Positions 4,901-23,400 of a stretch of DNA of 64,000 bases are shown here, piece by piece. Both the position numbers and the translations under genes were made by a program. Under the pieces are notes generated by a model that worked only from the letters and a program-made list of their open reading frames with translations, was not told the DNA's origin and did no database searches. Positions within the stretch are counted from its first letter, which is position 1. Each line of letters begins with the position of its first letter. Source of the DNA: Octopus bimaculoides (taxonomy: Eukaryota); contig NC_068988.1 in assembly GCF_001194135.2 (NCBI RefSeq), forward strand, positions 30,852,618-30,916,617. Reading direction: 5' to 3'.

Positions 4901-7900
4901 TTTCACATCCATTCCATGAATCGTGGTTCAAAGAATAAAGATAAAGAATCTGTCCTACAGGCGCAATGGATTTTACACAGTTACTTTCAAGTCAATATTT
5001 AGTAATTTGTTGTCCATTTCCACCTCTTGTAGATTGAACAAAAATGCAGGCATATCTTTTTCCAGAATCTTCTCTCTCTCAAGGCCCTCCCCCACCAAAC
5101 ATTTCTCTTGTCCTTACTTACATACAACAGTCTTTCTCCATTTCCTCTTTGTCACTCTCCATCTCTAACTTGCCATCTGAAAACCAGTCTCATTGTACTC
5201 ATTCTTGTCTCTCCATCTGCCTCGCACCCGCTTCCTTTCTTAGTCTGTCTCACTCTCGTCTTCCTTGTCAGATTTCTACTTGATTTCATTCAACATTTTA
5301 TTTGCAGGTGAAACTCGTCTTGATAAAAAATAATACTGAAATTCACTCATTAACTTTCAATGCAAAAATGTCAAGTAACACCGACTGGTTCCATTCCAGT
5401 AGACTCCTTTCAACTCCCTGGTTTGGAAATGTAGCAGCAGCGTACAGGTACTTTGATGGGTATATATTAACATTTTATTTATTTGCATTATAGATTTCTG
5501 TTGCTGATAAGTTATGATTTCTTGCCTAGTCAGTTACATATTTTGGAATGAGGTTACAGTCGACTATGATACATCGATCTCAGTAATTAACTAGTATTAT
5601 TTTATGGACAATGATACCAAGCATGATCGTAACGGGATTCGGAATCAAAACAACGAGGAGCAAAAATAACTTCAACATAGCTTGTTGTTTGCAACTTCAC
5701 TGATTCTTTCTTTAATTCTTTTAAATGACGACGAGGTACTTCTTGGTTATCACATTCCCATTAAAACATTAGGTCATCTCCCCCCAGATGAAAAACATTG
5801 CTTAACCCGCAATAAAACAAAAGTAAGAATGATAATAATAATAATAATGATGATAACTATAATAATAATAACTCAGTAATAAATAGAACAGGGCAGCATA
5901 TTAGCAAAATCTGAAGACACAAAAATCCAAATAACTACCGATCAAGAACATGTTTTAACATCACCTACAAGATTCTCACATCTATACTAACTGAAAGGAT
6001 ATACGATTTCTTTGAACAGAACTCTGCCTTTCCACAAGCGCAAAAAGGCTGTAAAAGGAATTCTTATGTTTGCAAAGATCAATTACCCATAAATAAAATG
6101 AATGTAGAGAATTGCCGGAGCAAAAAGAAAAACCTGAGTATGGCATGGATAGACAACTGGAAAGTGTTTGATAGTATCCTACATAATTGGCTGCTCAAGG
6201 CACTCGAGATATATAAGATGTCGTCTCCAAATTCTTACAAGGTAGCAAGGCCAAGTGGAACACGCGTCTCGCTGTAAACCATAGTAATTGTATAAGCCAA
6301 TCTAACAACGTCAACATAAAACCAGACATCTTTCAAGGTGACTGCCTCTCCCCATTACTCTTTTGCATGGCACGGATCCCACTCAGAGAGAACAGAAAAA
6401 CTGAAATATAACATAAAAACCGAGGCTAAAATGATTACAGGTCTGTTTGCTCAGAGTTGAACTGGTGCTAAATAATAACTGATTCCTATAATTTACAGTT
6501 ATTTTTTATATTCTATGTAATATGTAACAAACACGAAAAGAAATATTCATCTCAATGATAAAACGATAAACAGAGCGATTTAATTAAACGGAACTTGGTA
6601 TCGTAAATACAATCGTAAAATTCTCCATGAAGATATTTATTAAATTCATCACATCTAATATATTTCAATTCTATATTTAAGAGATGAGAAATTAGGTATA
6701 TTATTAACATTATTTACATTATTTACATTCGACGGATAATTGTCCTCATTTTGTTTGTTGAAATGGATCCTCTCACGGACGAGGGCACGTCCTGCCCTTT
6801 CCGTTACTCTTTTAGCTTTATGTGAATCGACTGGTGTCGTTATATTCAAGCCAGGTGGTGTTAGCTTTGAGTCTCTACAACTACTTAAGAAAGTTAGATG
6901 GTTTGAAAGACGAGCTAGTTTTGATGGAGTTTCTCTATATGTCTCCATTGAAGTCTAATTTAAGAGATGAGGAATTATGTATATTATTTACATTATTTAC
7001 ATTATTTACATTCGACGGATATTTGTTCTCATCTTGTGTAAATAATGTAAATAATGTAAATAATCTAATATATTTGTTGCAGCAAAAGGTATTTCAAGAT
7101 CCAACCAAGCGGAGGCAACTACCTACTCCATGTATTGTGGGAGAATTACAGGACTTACGAAATTCGCTACCGAATGAACATCGATGGTAAGAAATATATT
7201 TCAATGTTGCGTACGCAAACCATTGTATATATTTGTATGTGTATATATAAGTCCGTGTGTGTGCGTGTGTGTATGTGTGTGTGTACGTATGTACGTTTTG
7301 TATACTTCACAATTTTATTAGTATTCTTCTTAAAAGGAGGTAACTGATTTAAAACAAAGAAAGGTGCGACCGCTGGATTTTGGATGATACATATAACTAT
7401 TACTAATCGATCTTTAAGAAAAAGTCATCTTACAGATTGTATTTGGTAAAGTCCGTGTGTCTCGGTCAGTTTCTTTTGTTAGAAAGTCTTAGCTTCTCCC
7501 AATTGCCACTACGACATTTACTAACATAACTATGTGCACCAATACTTATTTATATAAATGTGAGTCTATAATCAAGGTAGAGTGAAAGCTGTTGCCGTGG
7601 TTGTACATAGTTATTCTCTTTCTTGCTGATTTTCGAAGAGATATTTCCATCTTCAGTGCAGCTGACTAATGTCTTGTGCACAAACTTTCTTTCACGCCTC
7701 AAATAACTACGTCAGGTTTGTTATTTTGGCGCTTGGTAGAAGTTTTAAAAGAAATGCTCAACTAATATTCACTAGGGAGCCGCAAGTCCATATTTGTTGA
7801 TGTATACATACGATTGCAAATTATTTGATAGGTACCGTCTGAGTGATGCCGTCCGGCATTTGAATGTTGCCTGTACTGATCATAATCCATTCCTTTCATC

Positions 7901-20400: not shown

Positions 20401-23400
20401 TAAATCCCACCTAGTAAATAAATGTAGTCGTGTTGGTCCCAAATTTCAGACATTATTTGGTATTCAGGAAGCGCTAATAGTCGAACATATCCCAGACGCA
20501 TGCAAAAGGAGGTAATAATTTAGGATAATTATTGGGGAAAGAGTTCATTCGTGCTCGGTAGCGGCTTTTGAAATCAACATGTTTGGTGGAAACGTGGTGT
20601 TATACTCGGCATTTGTAGAGTATAATTTTGCGTAGAGAGAAATCTCCAAGAGGTCGGTGTTAGACACCTGACAAGTGCATGTTTTTCTACCTACCCTGCA
20701 GCTGGAGATAATCGCTGGGAAGTTCAGGTTCGTAAGACCCGTTACCAGTAATGAAGAAGTAGATGTATAATTAGTACCAGTGTTTGCGTAATTGCTTCTA
20801 TATATCTATGTAAGTGTGTATATACATATATACATACTGCTGTGGCAAGAATCATTGACACCCTGGGGGATTGGAAGAATGAACTAGCCGAACTCTTATA
20901 AAGTGTAGAGGTAGGTAGTAGTTGAGAGAGAGTGTTTGATAGTCTCGCGAAGTACGTCGTGTGAACACATTGATTAAACTTCTGCTGCATAATTTATATA
21001 TCCAGCCTGTGTTAAGGATATATATATATATATATGCATATGAATATATATAAATGTATATGTGTGTATATGTGTGTATGTGTGTGTGTGTGTGTGTGTG
21101 TGTGTGTGTGTGTGTGTGTGTGTGTGTGTGTGTGTGTGTGTGTGTGTGTGTGTGTGTGTGTGTGTGTGTGTGTGTGTGTGTGTGTTTGTGTGTGTGTCTG
21201 TGTGTGTGTAGCTCTGTGCGTGTATATAAAGTATCTTTCCTACAACTGCAACGAAATTCATACAATCTTAAATCAATATTTATTACTTTATCCTCCAGTT
21301 CCTCCTGTTACACTTACGCAAAAATGCATGCACATCTTTTCCCAGAATCTTATCTCTCTTAAGTCTCCCCTCCCCATACTCTCTCTTAGATCTGTCTTTT
21401 CTCATTCCCTTGTTTACACTCTCTATCTCTCACTTTCCTTCTCATTTTCAGTTTCATTGTACTCTTACTTGTCTCTCTATCTGCCTCTCGCCCGCTTCCT
21501 TTCTCAACCTGTCTCATTATCGTCTTCCTTGTCAGATTTCTACATGATTTCATTCCAATTGCATTTGCAGGTGAAACTCTGGTTCGTACGTCGTTCTCAC
21601 AGAATTAACTCAATAACTTTTAATGGAACGAATAAAAATTCTACAGCGTGGTTCAATGAGATGAACCTCCTTTCACGGCCGTGGTATCTACCTCTACCAG
21701 TACGTTACATGTTCAGTTTAAGGTATATATTGACACTGTCTACTTTATTTGTATTTATAGGTTTTCATTATAAATAATTATGGTTTCCCACATAGTATTA
21801 TTTTATCGACAAAGGAAGAATAAATGGCAAGCAAGAACGTGGTGGGATTGAGTATCAAATCATTGAGGAATAAATATAACTTCAACCCGATTTATTGTTT
21901 ACAGTCTTATGAAAGACAAGGTATGGTGCCCTCCACTGTGAGGCGAACGAACACAGTTTCTACATGGACGTGGGCTGATTAGTGCATGGGAGTTTATCGA
22001 CAGTGAACGATGAAACATAACATAATATTTGGTAAACTGCAAATAAGATCTACTGAATGTACTGCTAATGCAGAAGAATTTACTGAAAACGGACTTGGGG
22101 GAGCTAATAAATTCGGATCACGAATAGCCAACGAGAGAGAAGAATCATTGTCTGATCCACCGTCCACGAAGCATCATAGAGGTGACTCCAACAAGGATGA
22201 CCTAAAACAGAAGACTAGAAGCTTAATCATCGTTGCCCGGGATCAGGCATTGAATAACAACACTGTGAAAATGGATATAAACAACGGATGTGACTTGAAC
22301 CTCTGCAGACTGTGTAGGAAGAAAGTCTCATTTTCTTTAAAACACACACGCACACACACACACATACACACACACACATATACATATGTGTGTGTGTGTG
22401 TGTGTGTGTGTGTGTGTGTGTGTGTGTGTGTGTGCGTGTATGTATGTATGTATGTATGTATGTATGTGTGTGTGTATATGTATATATATATATATATATA
22501 TATATATATATATATATATATATATATATATATATATATATATATATATATTGTTAGATAGATAGATAGATAGATAGATCATAAAAAATAAGCATTGAAA
22601 GTAGCAATTAAAGAAATAATCATTGATTCCACAATTAATTAAGGAACATGAAAAATAATGCAACTCTATTTTTTAAAGGATAAACACATTTATAATTAAT
22701 GTTAGAATTAATTACATTGAAGGATAAAAATATTTACAATACAAAGTTTCAAAATATGCAGGTAGCAATAGTCATGACACTAGGGACAAAAATGTTTTTT
22801 AACAAATGTACTTTTCCTATCATGGCTATATATGTACAAATATATAATAACAATTTAGATAAAAAAGTAGGACATATATCATATTCTATGTAATACATAT
22901 GAAAAGGGAAATGATATAATCATCTCAATGATTAAAAGATAAACTGAAGTATTCATCAAACGGAACTGGGTGTCGTAAATACAATGCTAAAATTCTCCAA
23001 CTATGATGACGTTTATTGAATCATCGGTTACGATATATTAATTTCAGAGAAAAATACTTTATAATTGAGCCGGAAGACGGCGGTGACTACATGCTGTATG
23101 CAGAAAAGGTGAATGAAACATATTACAATATCAGTTTCAGAATGAGCAGCAGTCGTAAGTAATATATATATATATATATTTCGTTTTTGTATATGCAAAT
23201 CATTCTATATATTTGTCTTTGTAAATAAGTCCGTGGGATGTGTGTGTTCCTGTGCGCGTTTACGTGTCCTTTTTTTTGTGAGTACGTGCGTGTGTACCTA
23301 AGTATGCATGTATGTATGTTTTGTATACTTCACATTTCTATATATTAGTATACATCGTAAAAGAAGACAAGTGGATTTAAACAAAGAAAGGTGCTATCAG

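What the first reader, a model, noticed from the sequence alone, without database searches (positions are those of the whole stretch)
5200..21722. Exons diverge faster than adjacent introns between paralogs
Seen (hand alignment): paralog 1 vs 2 exon 3 is 87/152 nt (57%) and 17/50 aa (34%) identical. The ~100 nt of intron just upstream (~5205-5307 vs ~21468-21570) is about 85% identical. Of the 17 conserved codons, 14 are nucleotide-identical, so synonymous divergence is low. Exon 2 of paralog 3 vs 4 shows about 10 amino-acid-changing versus 2 synonymous codon differences. Established: introns more conserved than coding exons is a hallmark of snake venom PLA2/three-finger toxin and conotoxin gene families. 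Inference: positive selection from an arms race with prey, pathogens or gametes.
Basis: partly seen in the sequence, partly recalled or inferred. Interest (0 to 1): 0.85.

Follow-up and report, generated by a model that had tools for sequence, protein, structure and literature searches.

The report
Mosaic, fast-diverging octopus secreted-protein gene cluster
Four tandem copies of an uncharacterised octopus secreted-protein gene really do differ more in their exons than in their introns, but the flagship exon differs mainly because it was swapped in from another family member, so positive selection is plausible rather than shown.

Summary
The window is Octopus bimaculoides. It carries four tandem paralogs of a small secreted protein: signal peptide, PAN/apple domain, and an unclassified C-terminal beta-sandwich. 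p1 is LOC106876625, p2 is LOC106876624, p3 is unannotated, and p4 is a pseudogene.

For p1 vs p2, about 4 kb of colinear intron is uniformly 75% identical (K80 0.31). All five coding exons are lower, at 69, 67, 59, 57 and 50% (pooled 64%, p=1e-9). Alignment bias, CpG content, shared TEs and recent conversion tracts do not explain the difference. The assembly gaps lie in microsatellites outside all exons.

The positive-selection reading is only partly supported. Gene-wide dN/dS is 0.8-1.0, and exon 3 alone gives 1.5 (not significant). Exon 3 of p1 is a mosaic. It is 77% identical to exon 3 of a third paralog, LOC106876621, against 44-62% for their other exons. Synonymous change there is low (3/26 vs 24/52 codons, p=0.0025), and the tree switches at the exon edges (p=6e-9). 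Exon 4 is synonymously saturated and probably has a separate history too.

The remaining exons still exceed the intron rate by 1.2-1.4-fold while keeping open frames and all 8 cysteines. The p3/p4 count of 10 vs 2 is what neutrality predicts, and it involves a pseudogene.

The parts
1597..9635 (+). Paralog 1 = O. bimaculoides LOC106876625 (isoform X2, 234 aa). Coding exons: E1 1597-1915, E2 3331-3422 (alternative acceptor at 3301), E3 5308-5447, E4 7083-7186, E5 9586-9635 (stop TAA at 9633-9635).
   Evidence: P0001 matches the window exons at 100% identity. Splice sites and translation were checked.
17175..26576 (+). Paralog 2 = LOC106876624 (242 aa). Coding exons: E1 17175-17499 (the p1-equivalent ATG is at 17181), E2 19375-19466, E3 21571-21722, E4 23048-23154, E5 26524-26576.
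   Evidence: My spliced model equals P0002 (XP_014780725.1) residue for residue.
34089..41700 (-). Paralog 3 (inferred model, 241 aa, intact ORF). Exons: E1 41700-41373, E2 39377-39286, E3 37216-37068, E4 35555-35449, E5 34138-34089.
   Evidence: Built from homology to p1/p2, canonical splice sites and an open frame. The exact product is not in the protein collection, so the model is unconfirmed.
54832..64000 (-). Paralog 4, partial (E1 lies beyond the window end) and probably a pseudogene. Exons: E2 63926-63835, E3 62032-61884, E4 56697-56596, E5 54881-54832. E4 is 5 nt shorter than in p3 and reads TAG for TGG plus a TAA in the homologous frame. Intron 3 is expanded to 5.2 kb.
   Evidence: Sequence reading and translation.
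5264..5467 (+). Mosaic segment of p1: exon 3 plus about 44 nt upstream and 20 nt downstream. Its closest relative is exon 3 of LOC106876621, not exon 3 of p2.
   Evidence: BLASTN HSP to L003 13989-14192 at 77.5%. Informative sites switch from p1=p2 69: p1=g621 25 in the upstream intron to 8: 33 in the exon, p = 5.7e-9. Synonymous change between p1 and g621 is 3/26 in E3 vs 24/52 in the other exons, p = 0.0025.
2848..3330 (+). Homologous intron 1 block (aligns to p2 about 18920-19374), 75.4% identical.
3423..4268 (+). Homologous intron 2 block, 5' part (aligns to p2 about 19467-20342), 74.6% identical.
4956..5307 (+). Homologous intron 2 block, 3' part, directly upstream of exon 3 (aligns to p2 about 21241-21570). 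It is 76.7% identical overall and 88% in the last 100 nt. The stretch is 75% pyrimidine.
7187..9585 (+). Intron 4 of p1, almost wholly colinear with p2 23155-26523. Identity is 74.8% over 2266 aligned columns.
7083..7186 (+). Exon 4 of p1. Against p2 exon 4, 9 of 12 conserved degenerate codons carry a synonymous change, so synonymous sites are near saturation.
   Evidence: Binomial p = 6e-5 against the neutral expectation.
9832..10459 (.). Assembly gap in the p1-p2 intergenic region, flanked by (TA)n. The gaps at 13719-13905 and 14531-15228 are of the same kind.

Best explanation
The locus is a birth-and-death tandem array of an octopus-expanded gene family. The encoded proteins are small and secreted: a signal peptide, a PAN/apple domain with 8 cysteines, and a roughly 135-aa beta-sandwich domain of unclassified fold.

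p1 and p2 arose by a segmental duplication of about 16 kb. Their introns and intergenic DNA date it at K of about 0.31.

The coding exons are more divergent than that for two reasons acting together.

(1) Exon-sized exchange with other, more diverged family members. This is shown for exon 3 of p1, which derives from the LOC106876621 lineage. It is suspected for exon 4. Among distant paralogs only the exons stay similar enough to pair, so conversion tracts would end near exon edges. That would leave p2-like introns around a foreign exon (this mechanism is inferred).

(2) Substitution in the mature-protein-coding parts at or slightly above the neutral intron rate. Meanwhile reading frames, splice sites, the signal peptide and the cysteine scaffold are kept. 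This fits relaxed-to-diversifying selection on a binding surface.

Shown: the gene models, the exon-below-intron identity, the mosaic nature of exon 3, and that p4 is broken.
Inferred: the direction of the exchange, that diversity is selectively favoured, and any recognition or toxin-like function.
For: Species and gene identity.

Intron vs exon divergence: intron identity is a uniform 0.735-0.767, against 0.50-0.69 for exons. The longest exact-match run is 24 nt. CpG observed/expected is similar in exons and introns. The aligner does not inflate identity.

Exon 3 mosaic:
- p1-g621 nucleotide identity by exon is 0.60, 0.62, 0.77, 0.44, 0.50.
- Synonymous change between p1 and g621 is 3/26 in E3 vs 24/52 elsewhere, p = 0.0025.
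- Informative sites switch at the exon, p = 6e-9.
- The relative-rate asymmetry flips with the outgroup: 2/14 with g621, 7/0 with p3.
- p2's E3 is no further from g620/g621 (33%) than its gene-wide average (32-36%), while p1's E3 is much closer to them (49-60% vs 32-36%).

Exon 4: 9 of 12 conserved degenerate codons are synonymously changed.

Residual excess without E3 and E4: E1+E2+E5 are 66.6% identical vs 75% for introns, p = 1.3e-4. The mature part of E1 is 65% and the signal region 80%. pN for the mature part of E1+E2 is 0.33 vs 0.25 in introns, p = 0.004.

Not drift alone: scattering the observed differences at random gives P(no stop codon) = 1.5e-4 and P(all 8 Cys kept) = 5e-5.

Family-wide divergence is 20-59% aa identity.
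Against: - The donor identity is only 77%. The exchange is therefore old, or the true donor was not sampled, and the direction rests on parsimony with two further paralogs.
- No donor was found for exon 4 or exon 5.
- Synonymous divergence between p1 and p2 in E3 is low (3/15). That would fit true sisters with a burst of replacements on p2, although the sample is too small to exclude an older split.
- L003 is half Ns, so most of the LOC106876621 introns could not be compared.
- The p3 model is unconfirmed.
- There are no expression, population or close-species data.
Confidence: 0.6

Rival explanations
1. p1 and p2 are simple sister genes. Their exons diverged in place through point substitutions driven by positive (diversifying) selection, as proposed for snake PLA2, three-finger toxin and conotoxin genes.
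For: - Exon identity is below intron identity in every exon.
- Codon positions 1+2 differ at 0.38 vs 0.25 in introns, p = 5e-9.
- Amino-acid identity is 41% against a neutral expectation of 51.5%.
- E3 has omega 1.5 with low synonymous change.
- The signal peptide and cysteines are conserved.
- Using g621/g620 as outgroups, 15 of 17 assignable E3 replacements fall on the p2 branch.
Against: - Gene-wide dN/dS is 0.76-0.99, with a CI that includes 1 and values below it.
- The E3 excess is not significant against its own synonymous sites (p = 0.40).
- This view cannot explain why p1-g621 synonymous divergence is four-fold lower in E3 than in their other exons.
- It cannot explain why the relative-rate direction flips with the outgroup.
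- It cannot explain why E4 is synonymously saturated.
Confidence: 0.2
2. The reverse history. p1 and p2 are old paralogs, as old as their exon divergence suggests. Their non-coding DNA was later homogenised by large gene-conversion or unequal-crossover events, and selection preserved the divergent exons.
For: - Synonymous divergence by NG86/YN00/ML (0.53-0.65) is above the intron K of 0.31.
- E4 is synonymously saturated.
- The genes are adjacent and in the same orientation.
Against: - It requires five separate exons to escape tracts that cover all flanking introns and the intergenic DNA at one uniform age (0.735-0.767 identity).
- Outside E4, synonymous change in conserved codons (18/77 = 0.23) fits the intron age (expected 0.13-0.27).
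- No high-identity tracts are seen; the longest exact run is 24 nt.
Confidence: 0.1
3. Relaxed constraint only. The copies are drifting toward pseudogenes, and the exon-intron difference is noise or an alignment artefact.
For: p4 is broken in exon 4. Omega is near 1. All three codon positions are about equally diverged.
Against: - Drift cannot push exons beyond the intron rate (p = 1e-9).
- The ORFs, splice sites and all 8 cysteines of p1, p2 and p3 are intact, with P about 1e-4 under random scatter.
- Both p1 and p2 carry RefSeq models.
- Simulation excludes aligner bias.
Confidence: 0.05

Closest known systems
Accelerated evolution of crotaline snake venom PLA2 isozyme genes (Ogawa 1992 and Nakashima 1993, as summarised in PMC7285919; habu genome PMC6062510)
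   Same: - Tandem paralogs of a small secreted, disulfide-rich protein.
- Introns and the signal-peptide region are more conserved than the mature-coding exons.
- The three codon positions diverge at similar rates.
- KA is close to KS, and both exceed the non-coding rate.
   Different: - There is no evidence that the octopus genes encode toxins or are expressed in a venom or salivary gland.
- dN/dS is not above 1.
- The fold is different (PAN/apple plus an unclassified beta-sandwich).
- At least one exon owes its divergence to exchange with another paralog.
ASSET (accelerated segment switch in exons to alter targeting) in three-finger toxin genes (Doley et al. 2008, cited in PMC7285919), and ectopic gene conversion in multigene families generally (MHC, chicken Ig V pseudogenes, plant R genes; from my own knowledge)
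   Same: A short exonic segment is replaced by a distinctly different one while the flanking introns stay alike. The result is mosaic paralogs and an apparent excess of exon divergence.
   Different: Here the switched unit is a whole exon of about 200 bp with a recognisable source lineage (LOC106876621). The exchange is old (77% identity). No functional consequence is known.
Conotoxin gene superfamilies (conserved signal and introns, hypervariable mature peptide; from my own knowledge)
   Same: A conserved signal sequence, hypervariable mature region and conserved cysteine framework. Both synonymous and nonsynonymous rates are elevated in the variable part.
   Different: The octopus proteins are about 240 aa with two folded domains. 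There is no propeptide architecture, and divergence is spread over five exons.
PAN/apple-domain adhesins and lectins (plasminogen N-terminal PAN, HAI-1 MANEC, apicomplexan MIC4 and SML-2)
   Same: The N-terminal domain of the model superposes on these structures (for example 4duu, rmsd 3.2 A over 86 columns, probability 1.00). UniProt names the relatives 'Apple domain-containing protein'.
   Different: Pfam scores for p1 are below the gathering threshold. The attached C-terminal domain has no counterpart in those proteins.

Membership tests
PAN/apple domain superfamily (N-terminal domain) | A significant match to a PAN profile HMM | tested here: inconclusive
   p1 scores PAN_4 22.5 bits (cut-off 27) and PAN_1 14.7 bits (cut-off 21.4). 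The family relatives P0028 and P0032 pass PAN_1 at 25.0 and 29.4 bits.
PAN/apple domain superfamily (N-terminal domain) | The PAN fold with its conserved disulfide-forming cysteines | tested here: met
   The AF2 model has pLDDT 89. Foldseek matches the plasminogen PAN domain, MANEC and Eimeria/Toxoplasma/Sarcocystis apple domains with probability 0.97-1.00 and rmsd 2.7-3.4 A, although E-values are only 0.09-0.3. Eight cysteines are invariant in p1-p3.
Toxin-type 'accelerated evolution' gene families | Introns more conserved than mature-protein-coding exons between paralogs | tested here: met
   For p1/p2, introns are 75.0% identical and exons 63.7%, p = 1.3e-9. The feature cannot be assessed for p3/p4.
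Toxin-type 'accelerated evolution' gene families | dN/dS at or above 1, significantly | tested here: not met
   Gene-wide values are 0.81 (CI 0.57-1.18), 0.76 and 0.99. E3 gives 1.5 with p = 0.40. Only the contrast with introns (pN 0.36 vs 0.25, p = 1e-7) exceeds neutrality, and it is confounded by the mosaic exons.
Toxin-type 'accelerated evolution' gene families | Signal peptide conserved relative to the mature region | tested here: met
   The signal region is 80% nt and 61% aa identical. The mature part of E1 is 65% nt and 42% aa identical.
Toxin-type 'accelerated evolution' gene families | Expression in a venom or secretory gland, or demonstrated toxicity | not testable with these tools
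   No expression data are available here. Full-text searches for the LOC identifiers and for 'apple domain' plus 'octopus' returned nothing.
Exon-segment exchange / ectopic gene conversion among paralogs | Phylogenetic discordance between a segment and its flanks | tested here: met
   In the upstream intron, informative sites favour p1=p2 over p1=g621 by 69 to 25. In exon 3 the counts are 8 to 33. p = 5.7e-9.
Exon-segment exchange / ectopic gene conversion among paralogs | Reduced synonymous divergence to the donor lineage, confined to the segment | tested here: met
   Between p1 and g621, 3 of 26 conserved degenerate codons are changed in E3 against 24 of 52 in the other exons, p = 0.0025.
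Exon-segment exchange / ectopic gene conversion among paralogs | Formal breakpoint detection on the complete family (GARD, RDP, GENECONV) | not tested
   These programs are not available here. DNA was available for only 2 of the paralogs outside the window, and one of those records (L003) is half Ns.
Processed or decaying pseudogene | Disrupted reading frame | tested here: not met
   p1, p2 and p3 have intact ORFs with canonical splice sites. Only p4 is disrupted, in exon 4.

The most novel reading that the evidence does not exclude
An octopus-specific, hypervariable family of secreted recognition (or toxin-like) proteins built on a PAN domain plus a previously unclassified beta-sandwich fold. 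The family would diversify by swapping whole exons between tandem paralogs, in effect a germline exon-cassette mechanism for generating diversity, on top of diversifying selection.
Probability: 0.2. Interest if true: 0.7.

Novelty: new member of a known kind. Interest (0 to 1): 0.5.

Why it matters
It adds a cephalopod example to the small set of gene families whose exons outrun their introns. It also shows concretely that this 'hallmark of positive selection' can be produced by exon-sized exchange among paralogs, so exon-versus-intron identity or pairwise dN/dS should not be read without testing for recombination.

It flags an unstudied, octopus-expanded secreted-protein family of at least ten genes in O. 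bimaculoides. Their C-terminal domain gives a confident predicted fold with no Pfam or PDB match. Related domains occur as repeats in amphioxus, sea-star, hemichordate and bivalve matrix-type proteins.

If expression turns out to be in salivary gland, sucker, skin, immune or reproductive tissue, the family would be a good system for studying how cephalopods generate binding-protein diversity.

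Tried and rejected
- Aligner bias as the source of high intron identity: rejected by simulation.
- Young shared TEs as the source of intron similarity: rejected. The blocks are unique colinear pairs, cover up to 75-93% of intron 4, and are uniformly about 75% identical.
- Recent gene-conversion tracts between p1 and p2: none seen; the longest exact run is 24 nt.
- CpG hypermutability of exons: observed/expected ratios are similar.
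- Ortholog test against O. sinensis (L001). The locus holds several p3/p4-like genes, and its RefSeq model is a chimera of two of them. Non-coding identity (about 78% in HSPs) is no higher than between p1 and p2. Exons are 67-78% identical, but most intron is unalignable. The result is suggestive of fast evolution and not decisive.
- No O. sinensis or O. vulgaris protein close to p1 was found.
- Site-model tests (M7/M8, BUSTED, MEME) were not run. The programs are not available, and family divergence is saturated (dS above 1.4 between subgroups).
- Function from structure: the full-length and C-terminal AF2 models gave PDB matches only for the PAN part. The C-terminal domain had no significant match (best E 0.14, weak fibrinogen-like resemblance at TM 0.38-0.46). 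A profile search of PDB sequences was also negative.
- LOC106876621 isoform X2 could not be located by exact look-up. Isoform X1 worked.
- Literature searches for the loci and the family found nothing.

Full report
WHAT IS THERE

A protein search with the spliced exons returned Octopus bimaculoides LOC106876625 isoform X2. Its 234 residues map back onto the window at 100% identity in five coding exons.

A self-comparison shows a tandem duplication of about 16 kb (unit 1 roughly 1.5-12.5 kb, unit 2 roughly 17-31.7 kb). Two further copies lie on the minus strand.

Gene models:
- p1: exons 1597-1915, 3331-3422, 5308-5447, 7083-7186, 9586-9635.
- p2: exons 17175/17181-17499, 19375-19466, 21571-21722, 23048-23154, 26524-26576. 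The spliced product is identical to XP_014780725.1, LOC106876624.
- p3 (minus strand): exons 41700-41373, 39377-39286, 37216-37068, 35555-35449, 34138-34089. The ORF is intact, but the exact product is not in the collection.
- p4 (minus strand): exon 1 lies beyond the window. Exon 4 (56697-56596) is 5 nt short and carries TAG for TGG plus a TAA in the homologous frame. p4 is most likely a pseudogene.

THE ENCODED PROTEINS

Each protein has a signal peptide, a PAN/apple domain with 8 invariant cysteines, and a C-terminal domain of about 135 aa.

An AlphaFold model of p2 is confident (pLDDT 89). Its N-terminal half matches plasminogen PAN, MANEC and apicomplexan apple domains.

The C-terminal beta-sandwich, modelled alone at pLDDT 93.5, has no significant PDB fold match, no PDB sequence match and no Pfam match.

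A full HMM search found 99 relatives. At least ten are O. bimaculoides paralogs, several with consecutive LOC numbers on the same chromosome. Others come from O. sinensis and O. vulgaris. More distantly, a longer version of the C-terminal domain is repeated in amphioxus, sea-star, hemichordate and bivalve proteins that also carry ZP, EGF or C-type lectin domains.

Within the family, amino-acid identity is only 20-59%. By contrast, one related apple-domain protein (LOC106884519 / LOC118764338) sits in a single 90%-identity cluster across the two octopus species.

ASSEMBLY GAPS

The three gaps named in the finding all lie between the p1 stop codon and the p2 start codon. They are flanked by (TA)n/(CA)n microsatellites. 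They touch no exon and none of the alignment blocks used. A fourth gap (24599-25247) sits inside a p2-specific insertion in intron 4.

CHECKING THE OBSERVATION

I aligned each exon and intron of p1 against its p2 counterpart with the same program. Fifty-nucleotide intron windows are bimodal: a non-homologous mode near 40% (indel and TE turnover) and a homologous mode near 75%.

The five colinear homologous blocks are strikingly uniform, at 73.5-76.7% identity. Pooled, they give 4028 columns, 75.0% identity and K80 0.307. The exons are 69.0, 67.4, 59.3, 56.7 and 50.0% identical, pooled 63.7% with K80 0.50. Fisher p = 1.3e-9. No intron window of matching size is as divergent as E1, E3 or E4.

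Several artefacts were excluded:
- Evolving intron 4 in silico and realigning shows that MAFFT slightly underestimates identity rather than inflating it.
- The longest exact run is 24 nt, as expected at 75% identity, so there are no recent conversion tracts.
- CpG content is similar in exons and introns.
- The intron blocks are unique colinear pairs, not dispersed repeats.

For p3/p4 almost no intron is alignable, so it cannot be claimed for that pair.

IS IT POSITIVE SELECTION?

Against their own synonymous sites, the exons do not show omega above 1:
- NG86 gives dN 0.486, dS 0.600 and omega 0.81 (bootstrap CI 0.57-1.18).
- YN00 gives 0.76 and ML gives 0.99.
- Exon 3 alone gives 1.5, but pN vs pS there has p = 0.40.

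Against the intron rate, the exons are too fast:
- Codon positions 1+2 differ at 0.38 vs 0.25 in introns (p = 5e-9).
- Amino-acid identity is 41%, where fully unconstrained drift at K = 0.307 would leave 51.5%.

Yet the genes are not drifting. Scattering the observed number of differences at random leaves an open frame with P = 1.5e-4, and all eight cysteines with P = 5e-5.

The signal-peptide region (80% nt) is as conserved as the introns, while the mature part of E1 is 65%. All three codon positions are about equally diverged. This is the same syndrome described for habu PLA2 genes (PMC7285919).

THE COMPLICATION: EXON HISTORIES DIFFER

Synonymous change in conserved, degenerate codons is 13/47, 1/12, 3/15, 9/12 and 1/3 for E1 to E5. 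Outside E4 the pooled value is 18/77 = 0.23, which matches the intron age (neutral expectation 0.13-0.27). E4 is close to saturation (binomial p = 6e-5).

I fetched genomic DNA for two other cluster members: L003 = LOC106876621 and L002 = LOC106876623.

Evidence that exon 3 of p1 is mosaic:
- Exon 3 of p1 is 77% identical to exon 3 of LOC106876621. The other four exons of that pair are 44-62% identical, and the flanking intron is 51-69% identical.
- Between p1 and LOC106876621, synonymous change in conserved codons is 3/26 in E3 against 24/52 in the other exons (p = 0.0025). Purifying selection on the protein cannot produce that. It means the two exon 3 copies share a much more recent ancestor than the rest of the genes.
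- Informative sites switch from p1=p2 (69 vs 25) in the upstream intron to p1=LOC106876621 (33 vs 8) inside the exon (p = 5.7e-9).
- The direction of the relative-rate asymmetry flips with the outgroup: 2/14 with LOC106876621 and 7/0 with p3. A simple rate burst on one tree cannot do this.

On the direction of transfer: p2's exon 3 is no further from LOC106876620/621 (33%) than p2 is gene-wide (32-36%). p1's exon 3 is much closer to them (49-60% vs 32-36%). The more parsimonious direction is therefore LOC106876621 lineage into p1. The tract is roughly 5264-5467.

E4's synonymous saturation suggests a second such event, but no donor was found.

WHAT REMAINS AFTER REMOVING E3 AND E4

E1+E2+E5 are still 66.6% identical against 75% for introns (p = 1.3e-4). 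pN in the mature part of E1+E2 is 0.33 vs 0.25 (p = 0.004). pS is raised too, at 0.37-0.39.

Lineage-specific bursts are visible. In E2, 10 of 10 replacements assignable with LOC106876620 fall on p1. In E5, p1 is again the derived copy.

This residue is compatible with diversifying selection. It is equally compatible with near-neutral evolution plus small undetected conversion patches, or with an exon-biased mutation process. I cannot separate these here.

THE p3/p4 CLAIM

Ten replacement vs two synonymous codon differences in 30 codons is what the roughly 3.4:1 ratio of sites predicts (omega 0.88). One partner is a pseudogene. This is not evidence of positive selection.

CROSS-SPECIES LOOK

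The O. sinensis locus L001 contains several p3/p4-like genes. Its RefSeq model, LOC118764386, spans about 60 kb and joins exons of two adjacent family genes into one product.

Against the p3-like O. sinensis gene, exons are 75, 78 and 67% identical (E1-E3), and E4 diverges after its first 23 nt. Alignable non-coding DNA is 78% identical. This is far from the 90% or more expected of constrained proteins between these species, so the family evolves fast there too. Intron alignability is too poor for a rigorous test.

VERDICT

The best account is a birth-and-death tandem family whose introns date the last segmental duplication. Its exons combine exchange with other paralogs at the scale of single exons (shown for E3, suspected for E4) with substitution at or somewhat above the neutral rate, under a preserved scaffold.

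This is a new member of a known kind: toxin-like 'accelerated' families, and ASSET-like or gene-conversion mosaics. The family and its C-terminal domain are uncharacterised, which gives moderate interest.

Noticed in passing
window 56596-56697 (minus strand): Exon 4 of paralog 4 is 5 nt shorter than in p3 and has TAG (for TGG) and TAA in the homologous frame. Reading from the splice acceptor also hits TGA. Intron 3 is expanded to 5.2 kb by inserted sequence. p4 is probably a pseudogene, although an assembly error cannot be excluded.
   Followed up: partly
window 7083-7186 vs 23048-23154: Exon 4 of p1 vs p2: 9 of 12 conserved degenerate codons carry a synonymous change, next to an intron that is 75% identical over 2.2 kb. 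No donor paralog was found.
   Followed up: partly
window 3301-3330, 19344-19374, 39378-39420: p1 has two candidate acceptors for exon 2. The RefSeq X2 isoform uses 3331. An upstream AG at 3299-3300 would add 10 in-frame codons. The same upstream site is out of frame in p2 and lost in p3. My guess at the X1 protein is not in the collection.
   Followed up: partly
window 5447/5448 vs 5459/5460: The annotated exon 3 donor of p1 (AG|GTACTT) lies 12 nt upstream of the position homologous to the p2, p3 and p4 donor (|GTATATATT). That position is still present in p1 and is in frame.
   Followed up: no
C-terminal domain, for example p2 residues 108-242 (exons 2-5): The AF2 model is confident (pLDDT 93.5) with no Pfam, PDB-sequence or Foldseek-PDB match. 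A longer, cysteine-containing version is repeated in amphioxus, Acanthaster, Ptychodera and Mya proteins that carry ZP, EGF or C-type lectin domains. This may be an undescribed domain family.
   Followed up: partly
L001 10001-70349 (O. sinensis CM016866.1): The RefSeq model LOC118764386 (402 aa) spans about 60 kb and joins exons of two adjacent family genes, giving two C-terminal domains in one product. It is likely a fused annotation.
   Followed up: partly
window 46926-48702, 12693-13166, 63121-63483, 5915-6274 and 100-264: ORF fragments that look like LINE endonuclease/reverse-transcriptase sequence lie between p3 and p4, in the p1-p2 spacer, and inside introns. The 5915-6274, 63178-63378 and 100-264 copies are related to each other.
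   Followed up: no
window 28580-29165: A tandem triplication of a unit of about 206 bp (85-90% identical copies) lies in the spacer downstream of p2. A further repeat family is shared among 12067-12526, 27956-28435 and 31199-31700.
   Followed up: no
LOC106884519 (O. bimaculoides) / LOC118764338 (O. sinensis), not in the window: A 287-aa apple-domain relative with the long form of the C-terminal domain falls in one 90%-identity cluster across the two species. It is a slowly evolving counterpart that could calibrate the rapid cluster.
   Followed up: no
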